Part shown: one piece after another, positions 13,080 through 56,859 of the stretch | Numbering within the stretch: the first letter of the stretch is position 1 | Layout: each line of letters opens with the position of its first letter | Origin: Scyliorhinus canicula | Lineage: Eukaryota | Reading direction: 5' to 3' | Assembly (NCBI RefSeq): GCF_902713615.1 | Contig: NC_052158.1 | Location: 38,493,729 to 38,557,728 of the forward strand | Length of the DNA stretch: 64,000 nt | Notes under the pieces: generated by a model | What the model was told of the DNA's origin: nothing | The model's database searches: none | The model's input: the letters and a program-made list of their open reading frames with translations, nothing else | Translations under genes and position numbers: made by a program

Positions 13080-13788
13080 AACCAGGGGATACTTGGCGGT
13101 CGTTGCCGCTCTGGTACTTTAAGCTGGACACGTGGCTTTCTGTTGGCTGGATTTTCACTTGGCCGTATTTTTGGACCCTTTTTGTTCTCTATACCAGTTT
13201 TTTCTCTCTTTTTCCTGTTATTTATAATGTTATGGTGGGAGGGCGGGGTGGGGGGGGAGTGCCGGGGGTATGTGTTTCTTGTGGGGTTTTTGGTTGTTTT
13301 GTATTTATCGGTGGGAGATCGGGGACGGGGGTGGAACTGAAGATGGAGGGGCGGGGAGGGGCAGGGCGAAAGCGCGGGCTTTCCTCTGGTTTCCCGCGCA
13401 CGGGGCAGAGGAGGGAGGGGGATGGGAGTAAGGGGCGTGGTCAGCAATGGCTCCCTTTCCCGCGCTGGAGCGGGGTCAAGGAGGGGTGGTAAGGGGGGGG
13501 ACGTCCCCCCATGCCGGGAGGAGCCGGAGTGTGGCAGGGGCAGCCGGGTCAGCGTAAACCAGCTGACTCACGGAAGTACTATGGAGGGTGCGTCGCGGCT
13601 AGGAAGGGTCCTAGCCTGGGGGGGGAGGGGGGTGGGAGGGGGAGGGGGGAAGGGGGGGGCCACCGGGTTGCTGCTGAAAAGGCCAGGGAGGAGAAGTTGA
13701 GGACTGGAGGGGTGGGGGGGGGGGCGCCATCGCCATGGGGAGCGGGTCAGAAAGGGAGGGCTGACTCGGGGCGAGCAGGTGACAGGAT

Positions 13789-20324: not shown

Positions 20325-20650
20325 TCCGCTAGTCACTGCCAGAGTCTGCTGGTAGCTGTGAGTCTCTGCCATTCTCTGCTGGTCATTGTGAGTCTCTGCC
20401 AATCCCTGCTGGTGGCTGCCAGTCTCTCTCATCTCGGACATTCATGGCTGGTCTCGGACAGTCGCTGTTGGTCTCTGCGAGTATCTGCTGGTCTCGGCTA
20501 CTGTCTGCTCGTCTCTCACCAGCCTGTGCACTGCCAGTCGAACCAGTTTCCACTGGTCTCCGTCACACTCTACTGTTCTCCGTCACACTCTGTCAGTGCC
20601 TGCAGGTATCTGCCAGTCTCTGCCAGTCTTTGCTGGTTGCTGCCAGTCAC
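20325..20650. repeat. Degenerate 10/20/30-bp tandem repeat spanning the class I stop codon and 3'UTR
   Basis: 30-bp units such as agtctctgccattctctgctggtcattgtg, 10-bp sub-periodicity, and a 20-bp tandem duplication near 20560-20600. Confidence 0.75.
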
Positions 20651-20766
20651 ATTGTTCATTCTCTTCCTCCAGAAACCAATTCCAATGATGATGCAAAGTA
20701 GAGTGAGTGAGATGGCTGTTGCTCCAACTGTAATCCCGACCTTCACGCCTTCTTGTGCCACTCTCT
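20570..20766 (-). CDS. MHC class I-like heavy chain, TM plus cytoplasmic exon
   Basis: CAGCAG acceptor in phase 1. Hydrophobic VGITVGATAISLTLLCIIIGIGFW followed by basic RKR, TAG stop at 20572-20570, AATAAA downstream. Confidence 0.8.
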
Positions 20767-20999
20767 CTGCTGGCACATACAGTTACATTAAAATTATATC
20801 GAGCAATAATAATTTACGAATGATTCTGTACTTCAATGTCCTGCAAACTAGTACTGTACATGTCTGATATTAGAGAAAGAATGTTTTAAATGTATGTACT
20901 ACCTTTTATGAACACAAGGCTAGATTGAGATAGGTACAGGACTATGGCGAGAGGTTAGCGGGACAATGGACTAGTTTGGGGTTGATACAGGGTTAGAGT

Positions 21000-23318: not shown

Positions 23319-23409
23319 CGAACGGGTGGATTCTTCCACCCCACCAGCCACAAAAATGTCACAGGCGAGACAACAACAATCAGAAACTTCAGTAGGGCAG
23401 CAGAATTTG

Positions 23410-24790
23410 TTTGAGATTGATACAGAGCTAAGGGAAACGAGTTGGGTACTGGGATTAATTCGGGACTGATGCAGGGCTATGGGGAGAGTGTGGGGTTGTG
23501 GGATTAGTTTGGGATTGATACAGGGATGTTTGGAAAGAGTGGGCAGTGAGATTAGTGTTGGATTGATACAGGCCTATGCAGAGAGAGTGGGGCAGTGGAA
23601 TTAGCTAGGGATGGATATCAGGACCAGAGGTGACAGTGGGGCAGCGGGATTTATCTGGGACTGATACAGGGCAATGGGACAGCGTGGGGAAGTGGGATTA
23701 GTTTGGGATTGATACAGGGTGATAGGTAGTGTGGGACAGTGGGATTAGTTAAAGATTGATGCAGGCCTATTGGGAGAGAGTGGGGCAGTGGGATTAGTTT
23801 GGGATTGATACAGAGTTATGGGGAGAGAGTGGGGCAGTGGGATTAGTTTTTGATTCATACAGGGCGATTGGTAGAGTGTGGGACGGTGGGATGTTTGGGA
23901 TTGATACAGGGCTATGGGTAGAGTGTGGGGCAGTGGGATGTTTGGGATTGATACAGGGCGATTGGTAGAGTGTGAGGACAGTGGGATGTTTGGGATTGAT
24001 ACAGGACTATGGGGAGAGTGTGGGGCAGTGGGATAGAACATAGAACATAGAACAGTACAGCACAGAACAGGCCCTTCGGCCCTCGATGTTGTGCCAAGCC
24101 ATGATCTCCCTACTCAAACCCACGCTATACCCGTAACCCAACAACCCCCCCTTAACCTTACTTTTAGGACACTACGGGCAATTTAGCATGGCCAATCCAC
24201 CTAACCCGCACATCTTTGGACTGTGGGAGGAAACCGGAGCACCCGGAGGAAACCCACGCACACACGGGGAGGACGTGCAGACTCTGCACAGACAGTGACC
24301 CAGCCGGGAATCGAACCTGGGACCCTGGAGCTGTGAAGCATTTATGCTAACCACCTGCTACCGCGCTGCCCCTTTGTTTGGGATGTTTGGGATTGATACA
24401 GGGCGATTGGTAGAGTGTGGGACAGTGGGATGTTTGGGATTGATACAGGGCTATGGGGAGAGAGTGGGGCAGTGGGATTAGTTTGGGATTGGTACAGGGC
24501 GATTGGTAGAGTGTGGGAGAGTGGGATTAGTTTAGGATTGATACAGGGCGATTGGTAGAGTGTGGGACAGTGGGATTAGTTTGGGGTTGATACAGGGCGA
24601 TTGGTAGAGTGTGGGACAGTGGGATTAGTTTGGGATTGATACAGGGCGATTGGTAGAGTGTGGGACAGTGGGATGTTTGGGATTGATACAGGACTATGGG
24701 GAGAGAGTGGGGCAGTGGGATTAGTTTTTGATTCATACGAGGCGATTGGTAGATTGTGGGACAGTGGGATGTTTGGGATTGATACAGGAC
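23410..24790 (+). repeat. ~48-bp minisatellite (gggattgatacagggctatggggagagtgtggggcagtgggattagttt), split by a SINE
   Basis: Many degenerate tandem units are visible directly. Confidence 0.9.
24035..24372 (-). mobile_element. V-SINE long form inserted in the minisatellite
   Basis: Complete head, V-domain and (ttctatg)n tail in reverse complement. Confidence 0.85.
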
Positions 24791-27803: not shown

Positions 27804-29118
27804 TTTGTTGGCTGGGATGGGAGTGAAGTGTGTATATGTGGCTGCAGCTTGTCAGCCTCCCGAGTGTTGATCACAAAACCAGTGAATCCCACGCCATTTC
27901 TCATTGGAATCGATTGTGTTCCACGTGTCGCCGGCATTAGCCCCTTAATAGTAGCAAAATCGGTCCAGGTGCGGCACTGGTTTTGCTGTCGTGGAAGACC
28001 ATGAATTCTGAGTCAGCGTCAACACTGAGTGTTAGAAACAGAGAATCACGCCCACAGTGTTTTGCCTTCAACGGCTTCCTGTGGTAATGAATTCGATAGG
28101 CCGATGCTCTCTGAGTAAAGTAATTTCTCCTCATCTTTATCCTAAATGGTCTACCCCATATTCTCAGACTGTGACCCCGGGTTCTGGACTCTCCCACCAT
28201 TGGGAACATCCTACATCTACCCTGTCTAGTCCTGTTAGAATTTTACAGGTTTCTATGGGAACTCCCCCTCATTCTGCTGAACTTCGACAAACACAATCCT
28301 GACCAACTCAATCTCTCCTCATACATCAGTCTTGTCATCCCAGGAATCACTCTGGTAAACCTTCACTGCACTCCCTCTATCGCAAAGATATCGGATATCG
28401 GGAAGTCTATAATCCAAGAGATTGGAAGTAAGGAACTAGCTATGCAAAGCCCTAGTTGAGACCACATCTGGAATACTATGAACAAATGTGGGCACTAAAC
28501 AATTGGGAGGATACATTGGCCTTGGAATGTGAGGGGCATAGATTTACCTTCGACACGAAGGGTTTGACAGAAGTTCGGAAGTCTCATCCACAAAAGGCAA
28601 TTTGATGCCACATCAATTGCTCATTTTTGAAAATAGGATACATAGATTTTTATTACATGGGATAAAGGTGAGAAAATGGATTTGGGTCACTGACTGATCA
28701 CTGGATAGTGAAACAGGCTCGAGGGGCCGACCCATCGAATCTATACAGTGCAGAAGGAGGCCATTCAGCACATTGAGTCTGCACTAACCCTCTAAAAGAG
28801 CACCCCACCCAGGCCCACTCCCCCACCGTATCCCTGCAACCCCACCTAACCTGCACATGCCTGGTCATCAAGGGGCAATTTAGCATGGCCAATCCACATA
28901 ACCTGCACATCTATTCCTCTGTGTAAAGGAATGTGCCAATCCTTCTGGTTACCAACATTTAGTAACCCCACGCCTTTTAAAAAACAATCATCGCATGTCT
29001 GACCATTACAGATGAGACCATCTGACCCCTCACTGGGGCTTTCTGCTTTGAACAAACAGACTGAGAGAGCACCCAGGGCTGGTGGAAGGACCCTGCTGCC
29101 CTGTCACTTGTCACTTAC

Positions 29119-29391
29119 CCCAGCGTACATCGAGGCCCTGCAGGAGGCTGGCATGCTCGACGTGACAGGAGTATACCTCCCCATCATCTCCCATCAGATC
29201 CATCGTTTTCATCACCCGATATGTCTCGTCCTGGTTGGGCAGCGTGCCACTGGATTCAACGTTGAGGACTTCCTCACCGTCCCTCAGCCATGCCACATCG
29301 ATTGGCCAGGGGTAAAAACCCGTCACAAGGCAGGAGAGTCTCAGCACTCGCTCGCCCTCAATCCTGTTCGCAATGAACACCTCAGGGATGG
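29119..29391 (-). CDS. MHC class I-like heavy chain, alpha3 exon (Ig C1-set, 273 bp)
   Basis: Acceptor cacttgcag, donor G|GTAAGT. LSCLVTGFYP...W...YSCHVEH is the C1-set signature. Confidence 0.95.
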
Positions 29392-35204: not shown

Positions 35205-35480
35205 CTCTCCTTTGCAGAACCCCTCGTCCGCACTTGAGGTATGTCAGCAGCCATTTCACGCAGTCCTTTTCCAACAGAGCCTTGAAGTACTTGTTCATAA
35301 AGGTGTAGGCATTCCATCGGTCCGCTAACGTCTGGAACTCTGGATTTAGTGCCATCCAGCTGATTCTGTCCTTGTCAAAAACAAATGCATCTTCCCCATC
35401 ATATCCCAGCTTTATGAACCCATCTGTGGAGTTATCGCTGTATATTTCGCAGCCACACATTCCCTGGACAAAGAAAATAC
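35205..35480 (-). CDS. MHC class I-like heavy chain, alpha2 exon (276 bp)
   Basis: Acceptor ccctttccag, donor G|GTACGG. QGMCGCE...GYDGED...W...RWN...CVKWLLTYL shows the canonical C101/C164 pair, W147, W167 and Y171. Confidence 0.95.
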
Positions 35481-36164: not shown

Positions 36165-37037
36165 TAAGTACTGAGACAGTCCTGCACTGTCAGACGGTCA
36201 GTACTGAGGAAGTGTTGCACTGTCGGAGTGTCCATACTGAAGGAATGCTGCACTGTCAGAGGGTCAGTACTAAGGAAGTGACACTGTCAGAGGGTCAGTA
36301 CTGAGGGATTGCTGCACTGTCAGAGGGTCAGTGCTGAGGGAGTGCTGCACTGTCAGAGGGTCAGTACTGAGGGATTGCTGCACTGTCAGAGGGTCAGTGC
36401 TGAGGGAGTGCTGCACTGTCAGAGGGTCAGTACTAAGGAAGTGACACTGTCAGAGGGTCAGTACTGAGGGAGTGCTGCACTGTCAGACGGTCAGTACTGA
36501 GGGAGTGCTGCACTGTCAGAGGGTCAGTACTGAGGGATTGCTGCACTGTCAGAGGGTCAGTACTGAGGGAGTGCTGCACTGTCAGAGGGTCAGTACTGAG
36601 GGATTGCTGCACTGTCAGAGGGTCAGTGCTGAGGGAGTGCTGCACTGTCAGAGGGTCAGTACTAAGGAAGTGACACTGTCAGAGGGTCAGTACTGAGGGA
36701 GTGCTGCACTGTCAGACGGTCAGTACTGAGGGAGTGCTGCACTGTCAGAGGGTCAGTACTGAGGGAGTGCTGCACTGTCAGAGGATCATTAATGAGAGAG
36801 GGCTGCACTGTCAGAGGGTCAGCACTGAGGGAGTGCTGCACTGTCAGAGGATCAGTACTGAGGGAGTGATGCATTGTCAGAGGTTCTGTACCGAGGGTGT
36901 GGTGCACTGTCAGAGGTTCAGTACTGAGGGAGTGATGCAATGTCAGAGGTTCAGTACTGAGACGGTGCTGCACTGTCAGAGGGTCACTACTGAGGGCGTG
37001 CTGCACTGTCAGAGGGTCAGTACTGAGGGGGTGCTGT
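36165..37037 (-). repeat. 33-bp satellite array (reverse orientation)
   Basis: Tandem actgagggagtgctgcactgtcagagggtcagt units. Confidence 0.95.
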
Positions 37038-37269
37038 ACGGTTGCACAAAACTGACATTCTGTCTGTATTCTCAGTTTAAAGTGATTACGATCTACCACG
37101 AGAGCTCCCACATTGTAAAGAAAAGCAAATAAAATTATCATCCACTCCATTGCTCTTAGTGATACAGGAAATCAATGCTGTGTTAGTCCCAGAAAGTCAC
37201 ATTGGCCAGACAATTACCAGTCAGTTATTCAGTTATAATGTGTGACAGATCCCTTCTGTGTTAACACAA

Positions 37270-40197: not shown

Positions 40198-40458
40198 CTT
40201 CAGCTCCATGCCGCTGTCGATAAAATATCTCAATGTTCCCTCTGACAAGACCATGGAATCCTGCCATAGTAATCATCATGGCGGCCCAGTGATCCTTCTG
40301 GAAGGAGTGAGCCATCCATCGCTGTCTGGGTACGATGCGCTGCAAGGTGCTGTCAAAATAGACTATCTGATAGTCATCCAGCATCGCCACCAAACTATAC
40401 TCAGGCAGCTCGGCCTGGCCAAGGTTCAGTAAGTAGTAAAATGCGAGGATGTGAAAAT
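40198..40458 (-). CDS. MHC class I-like heavy chain, alpha1 exon (261 bp)
   Basis: Acceptor tttatcctgcag, donor G|GTAAGG. Translation DFHILAFYY...LPEYSLVAMLDDYQIVYFDS...PRQRWM...DHW follows the class I alpha1 pattern (H3, D29/D30, W60). Confidence 0.93.
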
Positions 40459-40866: not shown

Positions 40867-40952
40867 AAGAATGATGGGTGACCTTATTGATACATAAGAG
40901 AAAATGCTGGAAAATCTCAGCAGGTCTGACAGCATCTGAAGGGAGAGAAAGG

Positions 40953-44214: not shown

Positions 44215-45295
44215 TAGAACGGTACAGCACAGAACAGGCCCTTCGGCCCTCGATGTTGTGCCGAGCAATGATCACCCTACTCAAACCCACGTATCCACTC
44301 TATACCCGTAACCCAACAACCCCCCCCCCCCCCTAACCTTACTTTTTAAGGACACTAAGGGCAATTTAGCATGGCCAATCCACCTAACCCGCACATCTTT
44401 GGACTGTGGGAGGAAACCGGATGTTTGGGATGGACAATAAGTGTGGTCTCGCCAATTCATAGAATTTACAGTGCAGAAGGAGGCCATTTGGCCCATCGGG
44501 TCTGCACCGGCTGCTGGAAAGAGCACCCTACCCAAGGTCAACACCTCCACCCTATCCCAATAACCCAGTAACCCCACCCAACACTAAGGGCAATTTTGGA
44601 CACTAAGGGCAATTTACCATGACCAATCCACCTAACCTGCACATCTTTGGACTGTGGGAGGAAACCGGAGCACCCGGAGGAAACCCACGCAGACACGGGG
44701 AGGATGTGCAGACTCCGCACAGACAGTGACCCAAGCCGGAATCGAACCTGGGACCCTGGAGCTGTGAAGCAATTGTGCTATCCACAATGCTACCGTGCTG
44801 CCCATATCCATGATCCCCATAAACAAATTGAAGGAATTTTCTCTGGTGGGGGATTCCAGAACGAGGGAGTAATGACATCAGAAAGCCATTCTTCACACAA
44901 TAGATGCTGGAAATCTGGATCTCACACTCCCAGAAAGCTGATGGAGCTGCGAGGATCAATTGAAATTGTCATAGAAACATAGAATTTACAATGCAGAAGG
45001 AGGTTATTCGGCCCATCGAGTCCTCACCGGCCCTTGGAAAGAGCACCCTACTTAAGCCCACATCTCCACCCTATCCCCGTAACACAACCTAGCCTTTTGG
45101 ACAGTAAGGGCAATTTATCATGACCAATCCGCCTAACCTGCACATCGTTGGACTGTGGGAGGAAACCGGAGCACCCGGAGGAAACCCACCCAGACACGGG
45201 GAGAACATGCAGACTCCGCACAGACAATCACCTGAGGCTGAAATTGAACCCGGGACCCTGGAGCTGTGAAGCAACAGTGCTAACCACTGTGCCCT
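44215..45295 (-). mobile_element. Stack of three long-form V-SINEs (another near 46325-46510)
   Basis: Reverse-complement V-domain cores near 44370, 44620 and 45120. Confidence 0.8.
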
Positions 45296-45929
45296 AAGGT
45301 TTGTGACTGGATTGATTAATATTTGTGGGGTCGAGAGATTCAGGCTCATGGAAGCAAGGCAACCGGATGGAGTTAAGATCAAAATCTGCTGCAAAGTAAT
45401 TGGATGTTGGAGCAGGCTGAAGGGGATTGAATATTGTGTGATGGTTTGACTGTGTAAAGCAGCTTACACTCATGTAGCACCCCTTGTGCACCGAGAGACA
45501 CCTCAGAGAACACAGCGGAGATGGGTGGGGGTGCAAGTAGAGTCAAAATCACAGTTCGGAGAGAAGAAGCTACAAGAACTTCCGGAGGGTGGGAAGAGAC
45601 AAGGGGTGGGGTTCTCCTGTGCTTGGGATTCTCTTTTCCCGCCAGCAACGCACCCCCACCGTGGGTTTCCCAGCGGCATGAGGGTGGTTTAAATGGCAAA
45701 TACCATTGAAACCACCCTCATGCAGACCTGTTGTGCTCTCCTATGGTTGACCCCTTCCCCACCCCCAGATAAACCCCCAAACCTGGGCCAGGTTTCCTTC
45801 ATGTTTCTCAGCTCAATTGATCGTTAATGTCCAGGGCGCCATTTGAAAATCTGGCTCATCTTGTCTGCACCAACTCCGAATGAATACTCTACCCACGACC
45901 ACCCCAGCCTATCCCCACAACCTAATCTG

Positions 45930-46304
45930 TGTAGTGATATGTATTTATGCTGGTATATAAAGAGTTAACAACTACATCATAGTTTAAGATAACTACTGGA
46001 TGGCAGCACTAGATTCATGTAAAATAAGTGAACTCAAATGATCTTGGGTCTCTTCAAACCAGGAGTGACTGGACAGCAGTTAGAGAGAGGTATAGCATAG
46101 TTAATACTCATAGTTAAATTTAGTTCATACTTATTCTGATTTACTTTATCACCAGTTATAGTTCTGTAAGAGTGAACAAACTCGTTAGTATTTAATTTGT
46201 TATTCATTAAACGTATTTTGCTTTGAATTGAAGATTGGTAGTTTCTTTGAAATCTAACCATCAGACCATTCTGGAAGTAAAGCAAAGAGTAATGACCTAT
46301 TACA
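45930..46304. mobile_element. Possible solo LTR
   Basis: TGTAG...TTACA ends and AT-rich body; no TSD seen. Confidence 0.35.
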
Positions 46305-47003
46305 AACAAGTAATATACAAACCTGCACATTCCAGGACACTAAGGGGCAATTTATCATGTCCAATCCACCCAACCCGCACATCTTTGGACGTGGGAGGAA
46401 ACCGGAGCACCCGGAGGAAACCCATGCAGAGACGGGGAGAACGTGCAAACTCCACACCAGCAGACACCCAAAACCAGAATTGAACCCGGGTCCCAGGCAC
46501 TGTGAGGCAGCAGTGCTAATCACTGTGCCAATAGGCAGTGAGAGAGGACAGGAAACCTACATCAAACATCCACCTATACAGAAGAACTGAAGTACTGCTC
46601 AAAATATCTCTGCCTGCCCTTCCCCCTTGTATTCTCTTCTTACTCCCAACCCCGTTCCATTCCCAATTCTTCCTTTCAATCCCATTGCCTCTCTACCAAT
46701 CTTCTTCCCCCTTCCCGTCACATTCCTGTTATTCCCTCCCGAGTTACGGCTCTCAGACGTCCCATATCAATGACGATTATATGTAACGTCCACTTTGATG
46801 ATAGTAGGCAGCCCATAAAATAACAGCCCCCAAACAGAAACATGTCAGACAAATTATCAGCACAACTTGCCATGAAGACCCCCTCCTGAAGGGATCGCCC
46901 TATGTTGTGCCTGCCAATCTCATGGATGCCCCCTCACCCTCTCCACCCCCATACCTCCACCCCCTCCTCAAATTCTGCCGACAGAACTGTTAGAATTCCT
47001 TAC

Positions 47004-47055
47004 CGGAGGAGACTATGGACACACAGCAAACATTCAGCAAAGTAACAAGCAGCAT
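47004..47055 (-). CDS. MHC class I-like heavy chain, exon 1 (signal peptide MLLVTLLNVCCVSIVSS)
   Basis: Minus strand caaaATG, 17 mostly hydrophobic codons plus one G, then a GTAAG donor. The G joins the alpha1 exon's initial AT to give Asp in frame (phase 1). Confidence 0.85.
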
Positions 47056-47260
47056 TTTGAATTGACACACAGCACACTGATTAACCAGTAATGTAATCTC
47101 TTGCGCATCAGAACACCACGCTGGAGTGAAGCTACTTATCAGTGCTCATGTGAGGCAGGTCTGATAAGCAGATCCACTCAGATTGAAAATGGATTGTTCT
47201 GGTCACTGCTTTACCAGGGAGTAGATTATGCCACCTGCCTTTTACTGCAGGCGCTCACAC
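47056..47260 (-). promoter_or_regulatory. Putative proximal promoter/5'UTR of the class I gene
   Basis: Lies directly upstream of the leader ATG. Blocks such as CTCCCTGGTAAA.CAGTGACCAGAA and CTTCACTCCAGCG are shared with the inverted copy at 47708-47916. Confidence 0.5.
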
Positions 47261-47707
47261 ATTAAAATCATTTTAAATATGAGGGGAACGCAGCAGCCAC
47301 TTTGTGAGTAGCAAGCTCCCAGCAAAATCAACCTAATCAGGTGAGGGATAAATATTGGCTCTACGCTAAGGAGAACTACCCTACTCTTCAAAATGGTGTG
47401 ATGGGACCTTTGATGGAGATGGCAGATGTGATCTGTTTAATGTCTCATCTGAACCTCTGACAGTGCAGCACTCCCTCAGCAATCCCTCCACAACAATGCA
47501 GCTTTTCTCCTGTGCTGGTCATCCCACAGTGCCACACTCGCTCGGAGAGGGGAATTCTCTTCAGTGTCTTGTCAATACTTATCTCTCAATCAACATCACC
47601 TGATCATGTTGCTGTTCGTGGGATCTTGCTGCACACAAAATGGCTGCTTCACCCCCCCCCCTCCCCCCTTTCGTTGCTACATGCAAAAGATTGTTCGATA
47701 GACCGTA

Positions 47708-47987
47708 GTGTGAGCCCCTGGAGTAATAGGCAGGCAGCAGACTCCACTCCCTGGTAAATCAGTGACCAGAAGAATTCAGTCTCACTGGACCTGCAGAACT
47801 GCTGCACGTGCGCACCAATAAGTAACTTCACTCCAGCGTTGTGTCCAGATGCCGAAGAGATTAAATTACTGTTGCAACAGCTTCTCTCCTGGTTACTCAC
47901 TGTCCTCTGTTTCAACATGCTGCTTATCACTTTACTGAACATTTACTGTGTGCGTTCAGTCTCCCCAGAAAAGCAATTCAAACAGTT
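47708..47987 (+). pseudogene. Inverted paralogous promoter plus pseudo-leader exon (MLLITLLNIYCVRSVSP at 47917-47968; donor lost)
   Basis: Reverse-complement homologous to 46985-47260 with the same 17-codon+G exon, but followed by AAAAG instead of GTAAG. Confidence 0.8.
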
Positions 47988-49957
47988 TCCACCTGTGGAT
48001 TGACAGTGTCACAAGGCAGTATCGAGAGTCCCCTGAGTGTGCAGTGTTTCATTGTCCTGGGAGTACATGGGAGCATACATGGGAAATAGAAGCAGGAGGA
48101 GGTCTTTGAGCCTGCTCTGTCATTCATTATGAACATGGCTGATCATCAAGTTCACTACCCTGATCCCGCCTTTCCCCCATATCGCTTGATCTCCTTAGCC
48201 TAAGAGCTATATTTAATTCCTTCTTGAAATGACATGATGTTTTCGCCTCAACTACTTTTGAGGTAGTCAATTCCACAGATTCACCACTCTCTGGGTGAAG
48301 AAATTTCTCTTCACCTCAGTCTAAAAATGTTCACCCCTCATCCTCAAACTGTGACCACTAGTTCTGGACTCCCCACCATCAGTATGATTCTTTCTGAATC
48401 TACTCAGTTTAATCCTGTTCGAATTTTATACGTTTTAGGCGGCACAGTGGTTATCACTGCTGCCTCACGGAGCCAAGGACCCCGGTTCGGTCACAGCCCC
48501 GAGTCACTGTCCATGTGGAGTTGCACATTCTCCCCATGCCTGCATGAGTCTCACCCCCATAACAAAAATATGTGCCGGGTGGGTGACTGAATTGGCTGCA
48601 TTGAATTGCCCCTTAATTGGAATTTGTTTTAAAATTTGATAAATTTCTATGATATCATCCCTCATTCTTCTAAGCTCCAATGAATATAATCCAAACCAAT
48701 TTAGTCTCTCCTCATATGACAGTCCCGCCACTCCATGATTCAACCTGGTAAACCTTCACTGCACTCCCTCCAGAGCAAGAACATCCTTCTTTAGATGAGG
48801 ACACCAAAACTGCACAAAAAAGGAGGTTTTGGAGGTAGATGGGAGATATGCGGAGATTCCGGAACTGGGGCTTTTGGTGAGGAGGAAGGAATTATAGGTG
48901 AAGTTTGATCTTCTATCCATGGGAAGGGTAGCTGAGGCGAGTAAGGGGGTCGTTTATGTATGGCGAGAAGGCCAGTCGATTGCTGGCAGGCCAGCTCTGT
49001 TAGCAGGCCACAGCGAGGGAGATTGTGCAGATTAGAGATGGGACGTGTGGGTTGGTAATGGTAGGTGAATAAGGTGTTTGAAGACTTTTATAAGGACTTG
49101 TAAAGACAGATGGTATGTTGGATATAAGGGTCCGGAAGTGGGAGAGGAGGAGAGGGCGGAACTGGAGGAACCAATGGGGGTGGTAGAAGTGCAGGCAGCA
49201 AGGGGGATGCATTCAGTTAAGGCACCAGGGACAGATGGGTTCCCAGTGGAATTTTATAAAAAATTTAAGGATAGGTTAGCACCGCTGATGGTAGATATGT
49301 TTGAGGATTCGATGGTAAGGGGAGTATTGCCGGAGATGATGAGACAGTCATCCATCTCATTATTACTTAATAAGGATAAGGATCCAGTAGTGTAGGTCGT
49401 ACAGGCCCATTTCTCGACTGAAAGTGGACGCTAAGATATTGGCTAAAGTGTTGTCATTGAGGTTGGCGGATTGCCTCCTGAATGTGGTTGGGGAGGATCA
49501 GGTGGGGTTTGTTAAGGGCAGGCAGCTGACATTGTATGTGCTGCGGCTGCTGAATGTGGTGCTTCCACCGGCATAGGGGAGGGAGTTGGAGATGGTGTTG
49601 ACATTAGATGCGGAGAAGGCGTTTGACAGGATGGAGTGGTGCGATCTGTTTGCAGTGTTGGAGAAATTTAGGATTGAGTCTAAGTTTGTGGCATGGGTGA
49701 AATTGTGATACAAGGATCTGACGGCGTGTGTACGAATGAACAATATGAATTTGGGGTACCTTCCCATGTCTTTTGGTTGCCCCATGTCCCCCTTTCTCTT
49801 TGCATTAGCGACAGAGTGCTTGGCCATCGCACTGAGGGGTTCAGACTTATAGAAGGGGATAGTGAGGGAGGGCGTGGAGAATAGGGTCTCTGTACACGGA
49901 CGATTTGCTTGTACGTCTCGGACCCGAGCTCTTCGATGAGGGATATAATGGGGTTGC

Positions 49958-50251
49958 TGTGGTGAATCACAGTCCGTGTAATTCACACTGTTATTATATA
50001 TGATGTACTGTGTCTATGTAAGCTCGGTATGCGAGCAGATGCGCGGCTCTGCCCATAGGGGGAGATGAGAAGTTTGTACTGGGCTCCACCCTTGGCTCCG
50101 CCCATGGCTCCTCCCACTAACCGGAAGTATAAAGCTTCGCAGTCGTGAGCCTGCCTGCCAGTTCATCTCGTCGCAGGCAGGCTCTGTTGAAAGACTATTA
50201 AAACCACTGTTCACTTCCAACCACGTGTCGTGTGAATTGATGGTCACATCA
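49958..50251 (+). mobile_element. Solo LTR (294 bp)
   Basis: TG...CA ends, 5-bp TSD GTTGC, TATAAA and ATTAAA inside; the L1 frame rejoins across it. Confidence 0.85.
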
Positions 50252-50734
50252 GTTGCTAAGGGAATTTGGGGCATTTTCAGCGTACAAATTGAAATTAGGG
50301 AAAAGCGAGTATTTTGTGGTGTCCTCCAGGTGCAAGGGTAGGTGGGCGGGGGGGGGGGGGGGGGGGGGGTTGCATTCCGGGTGGCGACAACACATTTTAG
50401 GTATCTGGGGGTGCAGGTGGTGCAGGATTGGGCATGACTTTGTAAAAACAATTTCATGAGCTTGGTTGGGAGGGTGAAGGAGGACTTGTTGCGGTGGGAT
50501 AGTCTACCCTCGTTGTTGGCAGTTCGGGTGCAGGCAATGAAGATGAACATCCTGCCACTTATTTGTTTCTGTTTAAGTGTTTGTCGATCTTTTTACCTCA
50601 GTCATTTTTAATGGGTAGATAGGTTGGACTCGTCGTTTATGTGGGCAGGGAAGGTGGCTAAGATAAGGAAAGCGGTGCTCCAAAGGGTGCAGCAATCAGG
50701 GGGCTTGGCCATTCTGAACTTGCTATACCGTTAC

Positions 50735-51227: not shown

Positions 51228-52436
51228 CTTACCGGGTGGCGAATGTGGAGAATGTGCAGGGCTGGATTAGGGAGATGGAGGCCTTATGGGTTCAGATGGA
51301 GGTGGGTTCCTGTAAGGGGTCGGGTTGCGGGTACTGGCAATGAAGCCGTTACTGTTCGCCCAGGGATGTATCCAGGGAGTCCTGCAGACGATTTGAGGGT
51401 AACTCCAGCCGCACTTTAAATTGGGGGCAGGCCCGAGGGTGATGCCAATGAGAGGGAACAATGGGGTTGAGACAGGGAGGATGGATGCAAGTTTCCAGGG
51501 ATGGGAGGAGAGAGGAGTGAAGGAGATGAAGGATTTGTTTTTGGAGGGGAAGTATGCGAGCTTGGAGAAGTTGTGGTGACGTTTGGGCTCCAGCGTGAGC
51601 TCCTTCTGCAAGTGCGGAGCTTCACAAGAAAGGTCTTCCCGAACTTTCCAGAGGCACCGTCCTCTTTGCTGCTGTAGGAGGTGCTGCCAGTGATGGGGCT
51701 GGAGGGTGGGGTCATTTCGCCGAATTATGGTAGGATCATGGAGAAGATAAGGTGTCCATGGGATTAAGGCCAAGTGGAAAGAAGAGCTGGGGATGGTGTT
51801 GGTGGAGTAAGTCTGGTGCGAGGTGCTGCAGAGGGTTAATGCCTCAACCGCATGTGTGAGAGTGGGGTAGATTCAATTAATGAAGGCATGCTTAATGAAG
51901 GCGAGGATGAGCCGGCTGCTTGAGGGGGTGGAGGATAGCTGCGAACAGTGCGGGAGAGGCCCAGCTAATTATGTTCATATGTTCAAGTCCAGCCCGATGT
52001 TGGAGAAATTTTGGAGATCGTTTTTTAGCACCATGTCAGAGGACCTACATGGAGATTTGGAAATGGTCTCTTGGAGGACATATGAAGTGGCAGACCTACC
52101 AGGGTGCGGGGGCAGTTGACTTAGCCATCGTATGTTAACCACTCGCAGGCGGGTTCTGTTGAGGTCAACTTCTCCCCACTGTGACTCGGCATGTCAGGGT
52201 GAACTCACGGAGTTCCTATGCTTGGAGAAGGTGAAATTCTCTCTGAGAGGGGCAGATGAGGGGTTCCACAATACATAGGGTTTGTTTATCTTACACTTTG
52301 GGGATCTGGTTACATTCAAGGGCTGGAGGGATGCAGTTTCGTGGAGGGCTGAGAGTGGAGATTTGTATTGGGTTTGTGTTTAATCTGTGTAAAAATGTTA
52401 AAATATTGCAAGTTGGAATAAAAATAATTATTAAAA

Positions 52437-55400
52437 TGCACTGATCCTCTGACAGTGTAGCACTCCCTCAGTACTGACCCTCTGACAGTGCAGCACTCCC
52501 TCAGTACTGACCCTCTGACAGTGCAGCACTCCCTCAGTACTGACCCTCTGACAGTGCAGCACCTCCCTCAGTACTGACCCTCTGACAGTGCAGCACTCCC
52601 TCAGTACTGACCCTCTGACAGTGCAGCACTCCCTCAGTACTGACCCTCTGGCAGTGCAGCACTCCCTCAGTACTGACCCTCTGACAGTGCAGCACTCCCT
52701 CAGTACTGACCCTCTGACATTGCAGCACTCCCTCAGTACTGACCCTCTGACAGTGCAGCACTCCCTCAGTACTGACCCTCTGACTGTGCAGCACACACTC
52801 AGTACTGACCCTCTGACAATGCAGCACTCCCTCAGTACTGACCCTCTGACAATGCAGCACTCCCTCAGTACTGACCCTCTGACAATGCAGCACTCCCTCA
52901 GTACTGACCCTCTGACAATGCAGCACTCCCTCAGTACTGACCCTCTGACAGTGCAGCAATCCCTCAGTACTGACCCTCTGACTGTGCAGCACACACTCAG
53001 TACTGACCCTCTAACAGTGCAGCACTCACTCAGTACTGGCCCTCTAACAGTGCAGCACTCCCTCAGTACTGACCCTCTGACTGTGCAGCAAACACTCAGT
53101 ACTGACCCTCTGACTGCAGCACACACTCAGTACTGTCCCTCTGACAGTGCAGCACTCCCTCAGTTTGGACCCTCTGACAGTGACGCACTCCCTCAGTACT
53201 GACCCGCTGACAGTGCAGCACTCCTTCACTATTGACCCTCTGACAGTGAAGCACTCCCTCAGTACTGACCCTCTGACAGTGCAGCACTCCCTCAGTACTG
53301 ACGCTCTGACAATGCAGCACTCCCTCAGTACTGACCCTCTGACAGTGCAGCACTCCCTCAGTTATGACCCTCTGACAGTGCAGCACTCCCTCAGTACTGA
53401 CCCTCTGACAATGCAGCACTCCCTCAGTACTGACCCTCTGACATTGCAGCACTCCCTCAGTACTGACCCTCTGACAGTGCAGCACTCCCTCAGTACTGAC
53501 CATCTGACTGTGCAGCACACACTCAGTACTGACCCTCTGACTGTGCAGCACACACTCAGTACTGACCCTCTGACTGTGCAGCACACACTCAGTACTGACC
53601 CTCTGACAGTGCAGCACTCCCTCAGTACTGACCCTCTGACAATGCAGCACTCCCTCAGTACTGACCCTCTGACAATGCAGCACTCCCTCAGTACTGACCC
53701 TCTGACAATGCAGCACTCCCTCAGTACTGGCCCTCTGACAATGCAGCACTCCCTCAGTACTGACCCTCTGACAATGCAGCACTCCCTCAGTACTGACCCT
53801 CTGACAGTGCAGCAATCCCTCAGTACTGACCCTCTGACTGTGCAGCACACACTCAGTACTGACCCTTGACAGTGCAGCACTCACTCAGTACTGGCCCTCT
53901 AACAGTGCAGCACTCCCTCAGTACTGACCCTCTGACTGTGCAGCAAACACTCAGTACTGACCCTCTGACTGCAGCACACACTCAGTACTGTCCCTCTGAC
54001 AGTGCAGCACTCCCTCAGTTTGGACCCTCTGACAGTGACGCACTCCCTCAGTACTGACCCGCTGACAGTGCAGCACTCCTTCACTATTGACCCTCTGACA
54101 GTGAAGCACTTCCTCAGTACTGACCCTCTGACAGTGCAGCACTCCCTCAGTACTGACCCTCTGACTGTGCAGCACACACTCAGTACTGACCCTCTGACAG
54201 CGCAGCACTCCCTCAGTACTGACCCTCTGACAATGCAGCACTCCCTCAGTACTGACCCTCTGACAATGCAGCACTCCCTCAGTACTGACCCTCTGACATT
54301 GCAGCACTCCCTCAGTACTGACCCTCTGACAGTGCAGCACTCCCTCAGTACTGACCATCTGACTGTGCAGCACACACTCAGTACTGACCCTCTGACTGTG
54401 CCGCACACACTCAGTACTGACCCTCTGACAGTGCAGCACTCCCTCAGTACTGACCCTCTGACAATGCAGCACTCCCTCAGTACTGACCCTCTGACAATGC
54501 AGCACTCCCTCAGTACTGACCCTCTGACAATGCAGCACTCCCTCAGTACTGACCCTCTGACAATGCAGCACTCCCTCAGTACTGACCCTCTGACAATGCA
54601 GCACTCCCTCAGTACTGACCCTCTGACAATGCAGCACTCCCTCAGTACTGACCCTCTGACAGTGCAGCACTCCCTCAGTACTGACCCTCTGACAGTGCAG
54701 CACTCCCTCAGTACTGACCCTCTGACAGTGCAGCACTCCCTCAGTACTGACCATCTGACAGTGCAGCACTCCCTCATTACTGTCCCTCTGACTGTGCAGC
54801 ACTCCCTCAGTACTGACCCTCTGACAGTGCAGCACTCCCTCAGTACTGACCCTCTGATAGTGCAGCACTCCCTCAGTACTAGGATGTTGCCTGGTTTGGA
54901 GGGAAGGTCTTACGAGGAAAGGCTCAGGGACTTGAAGTTGTTTTCGTTGGAGAGGAGAAGGCTGAGAGGTGACTTAATAGAGACATATAAGATAGTCAGA
55001 GGGTTAGATAGGGTGGACAGTGAGAGTCTTTTTCCTCGGATGTTGATGACCAACACGAGGGGACATAGCTTTAAATTGAGGGGTGATAGATTTAGGACAG
55101 ATGTCAGAGGCAGTTTCTTTACTCAGAGAGTAGTAGGGGTGTGGAACGCCCTGCCTGCAACAGTAGTAGACTCGCCAACTTTAAGGGCATTTAAGTAGTC
55201 ACTGGATAGACATATGGATGAAAATGGAATAGTGTAGGTCAGATAGGCTTCAGATGGTTTCACAGGTCGGGGCAACATCGAGGGCCGAAGGGCCCATACT
55301 GCGCTGTAGTGTTCTATGTTCTATGTTCTATGACCCTCTGACTGTGCAGCACTCCCTCTGTACTGACCCTCTGACAGAGCAGCACTCCCTCAGTACTGAC

Positions 55401-56187
55401 CCTCTGACAGTGCAGCACTCCCTCAATACTGAACCTCTGTGTGTAGCACTCCCTCTGTACTGACCCTCTGACAGTGCAGCACTCCCTCAGTACTGACCCT
55501 CTGACAGTGCAGCACTCCCTCAGTACTGACTCTGACAGTGCAGCACTCCCTCAGTACTGAACCTCTGACTGTGCAGCACTCCCTCAGTACTGACCCTCTG
55601 ACAGTGCAGCACTCCCTCAGTACTGAACCTCTGACAGTGCAGCACTCCCTCAGTACTGACTCTGACAGTGCAGCACACCCTCAGTACTGAATCTCTGGCT
55701 GTGCAGCACTCCCTCAGTACTGACCCTCTGGCAGTGCAGCACTCCCCTCAGTACTGACCCTCTGACAGTGCAGCACTCCCTCAGTACTGACCCTCTGACA
55801 GTGCAGCTCTCCCTCAGTACTGACCCTCTGACAGTGCAGCACTCCCTCAGTACTGACCCTCTGACAGTGCAGCACTCCCTCAGTACTGAGCCACTGACTG
55901 TGCAGCACATACTCAGTACTGACCCTCTGACAGTGCAGCACTCCCTCAGTACTGACCCTCTGACAGTGCAGCACTCCCTCAGTACTGACCCTCTGACAGT
56001 GCAGCACTCCCTCAGTACTGACCCTCTGACAGTGCAGCACTCCCTCAGTACTGACCCTCTGACAGTGCAGCACTCCCTCAGTACTGACCCTCTGACTGTG
56101 CAGCACACACTCAGTACTGACCCTCTGACATTGCAGCACTCCCTCAGTACTGAGCCACTGACTGTGCAGCACATACTCAGTACTGTA
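52437..56187 (+). repeat. 33-bp satellite array (cagtactgaccctctgacagtgcagcactccct), split by a CR1 fragment
   Basis: About 100 tandem units are visible directly. Confidence 0.97.
54881..55331 (+). mobile_element. 5'-truncated CR1 3' end inside the satellite
   Basis: RMLPGLEGRSYEERL...LRGDLIETYK and a (ttctatg)n tail. Confidence 0.9.
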
Positions 56188-56859
56188 CTGAACAATCGAC
56201 TGTTCCGCTCTCTGTCTGAGGCTAATATTTATTGTTCAATGGGCATTGTGAGACTCAGACATGAAGATCAACAATTCGTCCCATTTATGTTTAAAGGCAC
56301 AGACACCTGGCACTCTTGATCACACACAATTGCAGACTTTCTTGGGAGAGCCCCTACTTGTCTCGAATCCCCAGAGGTTTGCTGGTTTCAGAGTGGGCAT
56401 GCCCTCCTCTTCTCCCTTTACTCTAAGAATCCCCTGTTCAGTGTCCAAATTGCCCGGCAAGATGTGAGGGAAGGCCTTCCCCCTCTCAAATGCCCACCTG
56501 CATCATCCGAGCAGGGTGACCTTGAAAGATCTTCAGTCAGTACTGTAGCACGGGCGGTGGGCCTCATGGCTGCAGATCCTGAGATGAACCCAGAAATCTT
56601 AGAATTTCCCAATTGGCCAAAGCAGCCACTGTAGCTGAAGGACAGTCAATTGCTCCATTGGTACTACTGTCCGTTATGGACATATGAACATTTCTATCCC
56701 GCAATATATCTATCAGAATTTCTAGCTTTCAGCCCCCTAGGCTCACTGACAACCAACAAAAGTTAAAGACAGCCCAGGGGAGATGGTCTCCTGGAGTCAC
56801 CTGGGGTTGTCTGAAATAAGCAGCTCTGAAAATTGTGGGTATATCTGTGGGGGTCATTG

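What the first reader, a model, noticed from the sequence alone, without database searches (positions are those of the whole stretch)
46985..47987. Head-to-head inverted duplicate of the class I promoter and leader exon with a killed splice donor
Seen: 46985-47260 and 47708-47987 are ~280-bp inverted, clearly diverged homologues. The left arm holds the functional leader (MLLVTLLNVCCVSIVSS-G|GTAAG). The right arm holds a same-length leader (MLLITLLNIYCVRSVSP-G) followed by AAAAG, and no class I exons were recognised on the plus strand after it. Inference: this is the relic of a divergently transcribed paralogue, which could act as a second enhancer set, a bidirectional promoter or an inversion substrate.
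Basis: partly seen in the sequence, partly recalled or inferred. Interest (0 to 1): 0.7.

Follow-up and report, generated by a model that had tools for sequence, protein, structure and literature searches.

The report
Orphan inverted copy of class I promoter
Next to a catshark non-classical MHC class I gene lies an old, back-to-front copy of just its promoter and first exon, which can no longer be spliced. It is probably a slowly decaying leftover, though it still holds control motifs that the gene's own promoter has lost.

Summary
46985-47260 and 47708-47987 are diverged inverted homologues (70.9% identity, E 4e-41). The left arm's leader reads in frame into an intact minus-strand class I gene. 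The right arm has AA where all orthologues have the donor GT.

The gene is a non-classical class I gene found in many elasmobranchs, here in a Scyliorhinus catshark. Its promoter and leader are conserved in sevengill shark, zebra shark, sawfish and skate.

The right arm is a lineage-specific, truncated duplicate:
- Homology covers a TE-derived upstream piece, the promoter, the leader and about 110 nt of intron 1, then stops at a transposon.
- No other class I exon lies in the 16 kb beyond it.
- The two arms are sister sequences (16 shared derived states; ML support 78%).
- Both arms occur at low copy in a related species. No inverted copy is seen in the held upstream sequence of the sevengill shark, zebra shark or sawfish loci.

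So this is not an interspersed repeat, and nothing shows it was ever a whole paralogue.

Function is open. The three RNA runs gave no reads on either arm. Both arms changed equally (25 vs 23 substitutions). The gene-linked arm has lost a CCAAT box, 20 nt of core promoter and an intron block that the orphan arm keeps, which hints at shared regulation.

The scan earlier noted orphan class II promoter modules and head-to-head class II genes in this genome.

The parts
46985..47260 (-). LEFT arm, unique core: promoter, 5'UTR, leader exon and start of intron 1 of the resident class I gene
   Evidence: blastn against the right arm gives 70.9% over 296 nt, E 4e-41. It aligns with the orthologous 5' ends in Heptranchias, Stegostoma and Pristis.
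47004..47055 (-). Left leader CDS (MLLVTLLNVCCVSIVSS + G). Donor GT lies at 47003-47002, phase 1, in frame with alpha-1.
   Evidence: The spliced ORF from leader through alpha-1, alpha-2 and alpha-3 has no stop. Orthologous models start MLLVTLLNVYCVP....
47131..47145 (-). Position of the conserved CCAAT box. In the left arm it reads CTGAT, so the box is lost.
   Evidence: Alignment A3; coordinates. CCAAT is intact in Heptranchias, Stegostoma, Pristis and the right arm.
47077..47100 (-). Left TATA-like site (ATTACAT) and the junction of a 20-nt deletion between it and the ATG
   Evidence: TATA-like to ATG is 43 nt here, against 54-63 nt in the orthologues and 58 nt in the right arm.
47169..47221 (-). 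Left X1-like, X2-like and Y-like module (CTCCCTGGTAAAGCAG, GTGACC, AGTGGATC)
   Evidence: This block is conserved in all sequences of alignment A3; coordinates. The motif names are my inference from mammalian SXY modules.
47280..47543 (-). TE-derived sequence upstream of the left promoter: three 33-bp minisatellite units at 47449-47543, then the element body. 47387-47543 is the unpaired spacer between the arms.
   Evidence: It is collinear with a TE copy at L002:30743-31189 and matches the 33-bp arrays at 36.2-37.1 kb and 52.4-56.2 kb. Depth in the relative's contigs is 60 to 390,000.
47544..47660 (+). Right arm, inner part: the copy of the 3' 117 nt of the same TE-derived segment
   Evidence: 72.6% identical to left 47386-47280, collinear with the promoter alignment.
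47705..47916 (+). RIGHT arm promoter and 5'UTR. It keeps X1/X2-like (47747-47772), Y-like (47781-47793), CCAAT (47812-47826), TATA-like TTAAAT (47857-47869) and the 20 nt lost from the left arm (47870-47889). It has three small deletions of 6, 5 and 5 nt.
47917..47968 (+). Right pseudo-leader (MLLITLLNIYCVRSVSP + G). The ORF reads through to a stop after 28 codons.
   Evidence: About five residues differ from the leader of the other elasmobranch orthologues.
47969..47970 (+). Destroyed splice donor: AA in place of the GT kept in all orthologues and in the left arm
   Evidence: Alignment A3, columns 294-295.
47971..48080 (+). Right-arm remnant of intron 1, including a conserved intron block (about 48009-48080) that the left arm has lost
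   Evidence: Local alignments to the intron 1 of Heptranchias (z 9.3) and Stegostoma (z 4.2).
48106..48819 (.). Transposable element with a nested SINE (48436-48628) that ends the right arm's homology
   Evidence: It matches window 28107-28385 and TE copies in L002 and L003. Depth in the relative's contigs is 1e4-1e5.
40198..40458 (-). Alpha-1 exon of the resident gene (context)
35205..35480 (-). Alpha-2 exon (context)
29119..29391 (-). Alpha-3 exon (context)
20573..20776 (-). Transmembrane and cytoplasmic exon ending in a stop (context; approximate bounds)

Best explanation
The right arm is a truncated, inverted duplicate of the 5' end of the neighbouring gene. That gene is a conserved non-classical MHC class I gene of elasmobranchs.

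A segment of about 0.5 kb was copied head-to-head about 160 bp upstream of the original. It comprised a TE-derived upstream piece, the X/Y-like, CCAAT and TATA-like promoter, the leader exon and about 110-135 nt of intron 1. The copying happened in the catshark lineage, after it split from the zebra-shark lineage and well before Scyliorhinus canicula split from a close relative.

The copy was never joined to class I body exons, as far as can be seen. Its splice donor is destroyed, so its leader is a dead pseudo-exon.

My most likely reading is that it is a non-coding relic that decays slowly because shark DNA evolves slowly. At most it fires short, unspliced divergent transcripts.

Shown: the homology, its limits, the sister relationship of the arms, the dead donor, the absence of body exons and the low copy number. 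Inferred: the duplication mechanism, the age and the present lack of function.
For: Homology and limits:
- The inverted homology has E 4e-41.
- Unique homology ends at about 48080 at a TE. The rest of intron 1 finds only SINE matches on the right side.
- No alpha-1, alpha-2 or alpha-3 relic lies anywhere else in the window.

Origin from the resident gene:
- There are 16 shared derived states out of 251 polarisable sites.
- Informative quartet sites favour left+right 8: 4: 1 over the alternatives.
- The ML tree follows the species tree with left+right as sisters (78/78). The stem is 0.024, the arms 0.16 and 0.145.

Distribution:
- No inverted copy is found in the sequence held upstream of the orthologous promoter: 9.7 kb in Heptranchias, 4.2 kb in Stegostoma, 12.3 kb in Pristis.
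- Both arms, each with its own outer flank, occur in contigs of a related species at about 94-95% identity and depth 2-7.

Signs of decay or neutrality:
- The donor GT has become AA, while the orthologues keep GGTAAGCAAT.
- The right leader has more derived changes than the left (5 vs 3). In leader plus intron the counts are 17 vs 11.
- Three small deletions shorten the X2-to-Y-like spacing from 19-22 nt to 16 nt.
- Left-right identity is much the same in the TE-derived part (72.6%), the promoter (77-80%) and the leader (75%). That pattern fits near-neutral drift of the whole unit.
Against: - The right arm has not decayed faster than the gene-linked arm: 23 vs 25 lineage-specific substitutions. 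A rate twice as fast is rejected (p 0.006).
- Each arm has fewer private changes (20-21) than the single working promoter of Stegostoma (32-36).
- Left-right differences avoid sites that are invariant in the orthologues (17.6% vs 31.1%, p 0.016). This depletion is as strong as between two working promoters.
- The right arm keeps the CCAAT box, the TATA-like site, a 20-nt core segment and a conserved intron block that the left arm has lost.
- No RNA evidence bears on either arm.
Confidence: 0.55

Rival explanations
1. The orphan arm is kept as a working regulatory module, and the two copies have degenerated in complementary ways. The right arm would supply orientation-independent elements (CCAAT box, X/Y-like module, an intron-1 block) to the left arm's start site 0.8 kb away. 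The left arm would keep the usable exon and donor. The pair might also fire as a bidirectional promoter.
For: - Three elements conserved in the orthologues are lost from the left arm but kept in the right arm. These are the CCAAT box, 20 nt between the TATA-like site and the ATG (together with TTAAR becoming TTACA), and the intron block at +67 to +135.
- In the distal promoter the right arm has 6 derived changes against 13 in the left. In leader plus intron it has 17 against 11 (Fisher p 0.075).
- Overall rates are equal, and conserved sites are avoided equally in both arms.
- CCAAT-to-TATA-like spacing is exactly 46 nt in both arms and in all three orthologues that cover both sites.
- The right arm's two upstream deletions add up to about 10 nt, roughly one helical turn, between X2 and CCAAT.
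- The gene itself is intact. Its protein is 95.7% identical to the S. torazame protein in alpha-1 and alpha-2, so it still needs a promoter.
Against: - The statistics are weak: p 0.075 for the region-by-arm pattern and p 0.11 for each arm alone.
- Site-specific mutation rates could produce the same avoidance of conserved sites.
- The presumably neutral TE-derived part is about as similar between the arms as the promoter is.
- The X2-to-Y-like spacing in the right arm is shortened by 5-6 nt. In mammalian SXY modules such a change impairs function (my knowledge, not tested here).
- There are no expression, chromatin or binding data.
- Conservation between S. canicula and the relative is no higher in the right arm (4.8% mismatches) than in the flanks (5.8-6.3%), beyond noise.
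Confidence: 0.3
2. The right arm is the remnant of a once-complete, divergently transcribed paralogue. The body of that gene would have been deleted or overwritten by transposons later.
For:
- The right arm's homology stops exactly where a TE begins, about 48080-48106, so its original extent is hidden.
Against: - No trace of alpha-1, alpha-2 or alpha-3 lies in the 16 kb downstream. At the arms' 20-30% divergence such exons would be obvious.
- No unique mirror copy of any part of the 6.5-kb intron 1 is found.
- The inner boundary lies inside a TE copy with a 157-bp spacer. This looks like a small local fold-back or template-switch event rather than a large segmental one.
Confidence: 0.12
3. The right arm is the live first exon of a plus-strand transcript. 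This could be a lncRNA or a gene beyond the window, using a cryptic donor downstream of the dead one.
For: - The promoter motifs are intact and the ATG is kept.
- Several weak GT sites follow within 150 nt.
Against: - Three RNA runs show no reads on 47760-47943. Those runs miss the left leader too, so this is weak evidence.
- The downstream 16 kb is TE and satellite sequence with no conserved exon.
- The ORF stops after 28 codons.
Confidence: 0.06
4. Both arms are copies of an interspersed repeat, or the structure is an assembly artefact.
For: - The inner parts (47280-47386 and 47544-47660) and the centre are TE and minisatellite sequence.
- Mirror-symmetric SINEs flank the arms.
Against: - The core arms have depth 2-7 in a relative's contigs, against 1e5-1e6 for SINEs.
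- There is one copy per orthologous locus, always at the gene's 5' end.
- At 71-80% identity the arms are far too diverged for a fold-back assembly error.
- The stretch is held in two samples of the species.
- The SINE symmetry is a coincidence, because the right SINE is nested inside another TE.
Confidence: 0.02

Closest known systems
Truncated MHC class I gene fragments and pseudogenes left by local duplication (the human HLA class I region has several such partial copies; from my knowledge)
   Same: It is a partial copy of a class I gene next to its parent. It lacks most exons and carries a disabling lesion.
   Different: Here the fragment is only the promoter, exon 1 and about 110 nt of intron. 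It is inverted head-to-head within 0.9 kb of the parent's own promoter, and its control motifs are at least as well kept as the parent's.
Orphan MHC X-Y promoter-type modules acting as distal elements (human class II region; also noted in this genome as s1-240145)
   Same: It is a copy of an MHC promoter module with no gene attached, and it might work as an enhancer.
   Different: This one belongs to a non-classical class I gene. It carries a recognisable dead leader exon and has a clear parent copy. Its Y-position is not a canonical ATTGG in sharks.
Shared bidirectional promoters in the MHC, such as TAP1/LMP2 (PMC2191963)
   Same: Two divergent start regions lie less than 1 kb apart (ATG to ATG is about 860 bp).
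   Different: TAP1/LMP2 is one shared promoter serving two real genes. Here there are two duplicated promoters and only one real gene, and no transcript is shown on the orphan side.
Duplication-degeneration-complementation of cis-regulatory elements (Force and Lynch model; from my knowledge)
   Same: The two copies have lost different conserved elements.
   Different: The classical model concerns two whole genes. Here only the 5' end was duplicated, so any complementation would be between two promoter copies serving a single gene. This is untested.
Direct duplication of the same promoter in Heptranchias perlo (L002:9778-10000 and 13092-13298)
   Same: It is an independent local duplication of the same promoter together with its TE-derived upstream piece. 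The second copy lacks a usable leader.
   Different: It is tandem rather than inverted, young (92.8% identity) and lies inside intron 1.

Membership tests
Truncated gene duplicate / gene-fragment pseudogene | Homology to the parent gene is confined to a part of it | tested here: met
   Homology covers only the upstream piece, promoter, leader and about 110 nt of intron. No other exon or unique intron match is found.
Truncated gene duplicate / gene-fragment pseudogene | Descent from the neighbouring gene rather than from another family member | tested here: met
   There are 16 shared derived states. Left+right are sisters in the ML tree with 78/78 support, which is moderate.
Truncated gene duplicate / gene-fragment pseudogene | A disabling lesion | tested here: met
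   The donor GT has become AA at 47969-47970, a site invariant in four orthologues and in the left arm.
Truncated gene duplicate / gene-fragment pseudogene | No productive transcript | tested here: inconclusive
   Three oligo-dT RNA runs give zero depth on both arms, including the parent's leader.
MHC SXY-type promoter | X1 (RFX-type) and adjacent X2 (CRE-type) boxes | tested here: inconclusive
   CCCTGGTAA(A/C)..CAGTGACC is conserved in both arms and in the three orthologues that cover the site. The resemblance to X1/X2 is judged by eye from memory of mammalian motifs; no motif library or binding data were used.
MHC SXY-type promoter | Y box (ATTGG) about two helical turns after X2 | tested here: inconclusive
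   The spacing is 19-22 nt in the orthologues and the left arm, and 16 nt in the right arm. The site reads ATTGG only in Pristis. It reads ACTGG in Heptranchias, Stegostoma and the right arm, and AGTGG in the left arm.
MHC SXY-type promoter | Occupancy by the RFX / NF-Y / NLRC5 enhanceosome | not testable with these tools
   This needs ChIP or reporter assays.
Bidirectional promoter | Divergent start regions less than 1 kb apart | tested here: met
   The ATGs are at 47055 (minus) and 47917 (plus).
Bidirectional promoter | Transcripts on both strands | tested here: inconclusive
   No reads fall on either side in the three runs laid.
Interspersed repeat | Many dispersed copies | tested here: not met
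   The core arms have depth 2-7, against 1e5-1e6 for SINE bins. The window holds only these two copies, and each orthologous locus has one. The feature is met only for the inner TE-derived parts.
Invertible (flip-flop) DNA switch | Near-identical inverted repeats and both orientations present in reads | tested here: not met
   The arms are 71-80% identical. None of the 15 best-supported joints printed lies at the arms (680 more joints were not shown). No DNA reads of this species were laid, so the second half of the feature is only weakly tested.
Conserved non-classical elasmobranch class I lineage (single-copy class Ib; UDA, UFA or UGA are candidates) | Orthologues across sharks and rays, class I exon structure, altered peptide-anchor residues | tested here: met
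   Twelve species have orthologues at 60-80% identity. The exon phases are canonical. By my alignment to HLA-A2 from memory, positions 7, 59, 84, 146 and 159 read F, H, F, R and L. Which named lineage it belongs to could not be settled, because the describing paper is not held.

The most novel reading that the evidence does not exclude
The orphan arm is not junk but half of a split promoter. After the 5' end was duplicated head-to-head, the gene-linked copy lost its CCAAT box, 20 nt of core promoter and a conserved intron-1 block. The orphan copy lost its splice donor and its X-to-Y spacing. The single class I gene would now depend on control elements held in an inverted pseudo-exon unit 0.8 kb upstream. 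This would be complementary degeneration between two promoter copies that serve one gene.
Probability: 0.25. Interest if true: 0.65.

Novelty: new member of a known kind. Interest (0 to 1): 0.4.

Why it matters
As a plain relic it is ordinary: one more partial duplicate in a duplication-prone MHC region.

Two results are more useful.

First, the comparison defines the promoter and true first exon of an elasmobranch non-classical class I gene. The 5' region (promoter, leader and start of intron 1) is about 70-79% identical from sawfish to catshark. The CCAAT-to-TATA-like spacing is fixed at 46 nt. Several public gene models of this gene miss the first exon.

Second, the catshark offers a natural experiment. 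There are two diverged copies of an old promoter side by side, each lacking different conserved elements, next to one intact gene. Testing them separately and together would show which conserved elements matter. It would also show whether MHC-type promoter modules already worked independently of orientation and position in cartilaginous fish.

Tried and rejected
- RNA test. Three oligo-dT RNA runs were laid on 45000-50500. Depth was zero on both arms, so nothing can be said about expression. No run on record as RNA holds the stretch.
- Mirror-symmetric SINEs (46335-46530 and 48438-48628, same centre as the arms). I first read these as part of a larger palindrome and rejected that. The sequence between the SINEs and the arms is not homologous (z 2.9), and the right SINE is nested inside another TE.
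- A larger inverted duplication suggested by oppositely oriented 33-bp arrays at 36 kb and 52-56 kb. Rejected: there are no unique mirror matches.
- 'The right arm is more ancestral or slower-evolving than the left.' The first pairwise BLAST identities suggested this (75.7% vs 71.7% to Heptranchias). The multiple alignment shows equal substitution counts. The BLAST difference came mostly from the left arm's 20-nt deletion.
- A search for short protein fragments carrying leader plus alpha-1 found nothing.
- No S. canicula protein model of this gene is in the protein database.
The Chiloscyllium protein is not on record.
- The paper describing the UDA lineage is not held, so the gene could not be assigned to a named lineage.
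- The S. torazame model's N-terminus maps to window 40935-40867 inside intron 1, between two SINEs, and lacks a signal-peptide core. I treated it as a likely annotation artefact, not as evidence that exon 1 lies elsewhere.
Full report
**1.
The repeat finder reports four collinear inverted pairs between 46985-47344 and 47596-47987, at 77-83% complementarity. blastn joins the outer three into 46985-47260 vs 47987-47708: 70.9% identity over 296 nt, E 3.8e-41. It finds no other copy in the 64-kb window. The local alignment score is 268, against 21 +/- 3 for shuffles.

The left arm, read on the minus strand, has ATG at 47055 and the leader MLLVTLLNVCCVSIVSS. Its donor is G|GTAAG, with GT at 47003-47002. 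The right arm, read on the plus strand, has ATG at 47917 and MLLITLLNIYCVRSVSP. AA stands at 47969-47970 where the donor GT should be, and the ORF then runs on to a stop after 28 codons.

DNA runs of two samples from two studies of the species hold the stretch.

**2. The resident gene.**
Minus-strand ORFs carry class I alpha-1, alpha-2 and alpha-3. Their exon bounds have canonical AG/GT sites, all in phase 1:
- alpha-1: 40458-40198
- alpha-2: 35480-35205
- alpha-3: 29391-29119

Spliced to the left leader they give an unbroken frame. A transmembrane and cytoplasmic exon near 20776-20573 ends in a stop.

A search of 1.8 billion representative proteins with alpha-1 gave one close hit, a skate protein at 74% identity. 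Word-indexed searches then found one orthologue each in twelve elasmobranch species, at 54-80% identity. All are named 'MHC class I-related gene protein-like' or similar. The S. torazame protein is 95.7% identical in alpha-1 and alpha-2.

The residues that hold peptide ends in classical molecules are mostly replaced. By my alignment to HLA-A2 from memory, positions 7, 59, 84, 146 and 159 read F, H, F, R and L. So this is a conserved non-classical gene. Reviews list the single-copy lineages UDA, UFA and UGA in elasmobranchs (PMC12562908, PMC10751288). I could not decide which one this is.

The annotated Heptranchias and Pristiophorus proteins begin MLLVTLLNVYCVP..VSS and continue into alpha-1. 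By orthology, then, the left leader is the true first coding exon. Several other public models start with unrelated N-termini that lack a signal peptide.

**3. The promoter is old and conserved.**
Four orthologous loci could be fetched. In each, the sequence matching both arms sits at the gene's 5' end:

| Locus | Species | Match | Identity to the arms |
|---|---|---|---|
| L001 | skate (Leucoraja) | leader at 100-153; the locus starts there | right arm 71.9% over 135 nt |
| L002 | Heptranchias | 9778-10095 | 72-76% |
| L003 | Stegostoma | 4196-4487, 10 kb upstream of alpha-1 | about 71% |
| L004 | Pristis | 12357-12724 | 67-70% |

Outside the exons and this 5' region, collinear matches between the loci are limited to short stretches beside exons, one intronic tandem repeat and transposable elements. 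So the 5' region is kept about as well as coding sequence.

The multiple alignment shows these conserved blocks:
- An X1/X2-like block, CCCTGGTAAC..CAGTGACC.
- A Y-position site 19-22 nt later. It reads ATTGG in Pristis, ACTGG in Heptranchias, Stegostoma and the right arm, and AGTGG in the left arm.
- A CCAAT box.
- A TATA-like GATTAAGTTAC exactly 46 nt after the CCAAT box in every sequence.
- The leader and the donor GGTAAGCAAT.

The motif names are my inference from mammalian MHC promoters. They were not tested.

**4. Origin and limits of the right arm.**
The two arms share 16 derived states out of 251 polarisable sites. Informative quartet sites favour left+right 8: 4: 1. The ML tree follows the species tree and places left+right as sisters with 78/78 support. 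The stem is 0.024, the arm branches 0.16 and 0.145, and the Stegostoma branch 0.25.

No inverted copy is found in the sequence held upstream of the promoter: 9.7 kb in Heptranchias, 4.2 kb in Stegostoma and 12.3 kb in Pristis. In contigs of a related species (coded organism B), one 903-nt contig covers the left arm with its intron flank (46509-47404). One 518-nt contig covers the right arm with its outer flank (47664-48145). Mismatch is 5-6% and depth 2-7, while SINE bins reach 1e5-1e6.

The duplication therefore arose in the catshark lineage after the split from the zebra-shark lineage. Arm-to-arm divergence is 20-29%, against 5-6% between the species. On that measure the duplication is several times older than the split between the two catshark species.

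- **Inner limit.** The left promoter is preceded by a TE copy running 47543 down to 47280, with 33-bp minisatellite units at its start. This copy is collinear with a TE copy at L002:30743-31189. The right arm holds only the last 117 nt of that element (47544-47660; 72.6% identical to 47386-47280). The copied unit is thus about 47386 down to about 46890, and the unpaired spacer is 47387-47543.
- **Outer limit.** With the orthologues as a bridge, the right arm matches their intron 1 up to about +135, which is window 48080 (z 9.3 to Heptranchias). It then meets a TE with a nested SINE at about 48106-48819.
- **Beyond the limits.** The rest of the left intron 1 has only SINE matches on the right side. 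tblastn finds no class I exon relic up to 64000.

The right arm is therefore a truncated copy. Nothing indicates that a whole paralogue ever stood there, though the TE hides the original end.

**5. Is the orphan arm decaying?**
It carries clear lesions. Both bases of the donor are changed. It has five residue changes in the leader. It has three small deletions, which shorten the X2-to-Y-like distance to 16 nt.

It has not, however, changed faster than the gene-linked arm:
- There are 23 right-only against 25 left-only substitutions. A twofold faster rate is rejected (p 0.006).
- Each arm has fewer private changes (20-21) than the Stegostoma promoter (32-36).
- Differences between the arms are depleted at sites invariant in the orthologues (17.6% vs 31.1%, p 0.016). 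This is the same degree as between two working promoters (0.22 vs 0.42). The depletion is symmetric at 13 vs 14 changes.

The left arm has its own losses:
- CCAAT has become CTGAT.
- The TATA-like TTAAR has become TTACA.
- A 20-nt deletion lies between that site and the ATG.
- The conserved intron block at +67 to +135 is gone, while the right arm keeps it.

By region, the right arm has 6 derived changes against 13 in the distal promoter, but 17 against 11 in leader plus intron (p 0.075).

Against a selective reading, the TE-derived part is nearly as similar between the arms as the promoter is. Mutation-rate differences among sites could also mimic constraint. The coarse comparison with organism B shows no extra conservation of the right arm.

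**6. Expression.**
Three oligo-dT RNA runs of the species gave zero depth over both arms, including the left leader. No RNA holder was found. Transcription from either side is therefore untested.

**7. Verdict.**
The finding is real, and its core description is correct: an inverted duplicate of promoter and leader with a dead donor.

The best explanation is a lineage-specific, truncated inverted duplication of the 5' end of a conserved non-classical class I gene. It leaves an orphan promoter and a pseudo-leader. The most likely state is a slowly decaying relic (0.55). A live regulatory role, through complementary loss of elements in the two copies, is a serious rival (0.3) and the most interesting reading. 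A deleted full paralogue, a live plus-strand exon, and a repeat or artefact are unlikely.

In kind it is a new member of a known class: partial MHC gene duplicates and orphan promoter modules. This scan has already noted orphan class II X-Y modules and head-to-head class II genes elsewhere in the same genome.

Noticed in passing
window 23391-24034 and 24385-24788; L002:31477-32938; L003:22610-22812: A 49-bp tandem repeat sits in the intron between alpha-3 and the transmembrane exon of the class I gene. The same unit lies in the same intron and orientation in Heptranchias, with about 30 copies at 84-88% identity to the catshark. That is better kept than the coding exons (75-80%). It is weaker in Stegostoma and not found in Pristis.
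   Followed up: partly
L002:9483-10000 and 12797-13298: Heptranchias has its own young direct duplication of the same promoter and its TE-derived upstream piece (period 3314 bp, promoter part 92.8% identical). The second copy lies in intron 1, has CCAAC in place of CCAAT, and diverges before the ATG.
   Followed up: partly
window 40867-40935 (minus strand); proteins P0123, P0124, P0125, P0126, P0128: Public gene models of this gene in S. torazame, Stegostoma, Hemiscyllium, Mustelus and Chiloscyllium begin with N-termini that lack a signal peptide. Where checked (catshark, Stegostoma and Heptranchias) the true leader lies 6.5-10.7 kb upstream of alpha-1. The S. torazame start maps into intron 1 between two SINEs. 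No S. canicula protein model of the gene was found in the protein database, although the reading frame is intact.
   Followed up: partly
window 48009-48080; L002 about 10121-10189; L003 about 4510-4535: A conserved block in intron 1 (+67 to +135 after the donor, with the core TTCATTGYCYTGGG) is shared by Heptranchias, Stegostoma, Pristis, the skate and the right arm. It is missing from the left arm, which keeps the next part of the intron (+140 to +316) instead.
   Followed up: partly
window 36200-37150 and 52430-56200; also 47449-47543: Long arrays of a 33-bp minisatellite lie in opposite orientation, in intron 2 of the gene and 5-9 kb beyond the right arm. Three units of it form the centre between the arms. 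The same unit forms arrays in the Heptranchias locus (L002:21.3-23.4 kb) and heads a TE copy there (30.7-31.2 kb). RNA reads pile up on it.
   Followed up: partly
window 46335-46530 and 48436-48628: Two SINE copies are mirror-symmetric about the same centre (47485) as the arms, to within one base. This appears to be a coincidence. The right one is nested in another TE with an approximately 18-bp overlap of the flanks, and the sequence between the SINEs and the arms is unrelated.
   Followed up: yes
window 40198-40458 and 35205-35480: The gene's groove residues differ from the classical peptide anchors. By alignment to HLA-A2 from memory, positions 7, 59, 84, 146 and 159 read F, H, F, R and L. 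Together with the Pfam MHC_I_3 hits of its orthologues, this may point to a non-peptide ligand. The lipid-binding single-copy lineages UFA and UGA reported for elasmobranchs are candidates.
   Followed up: no
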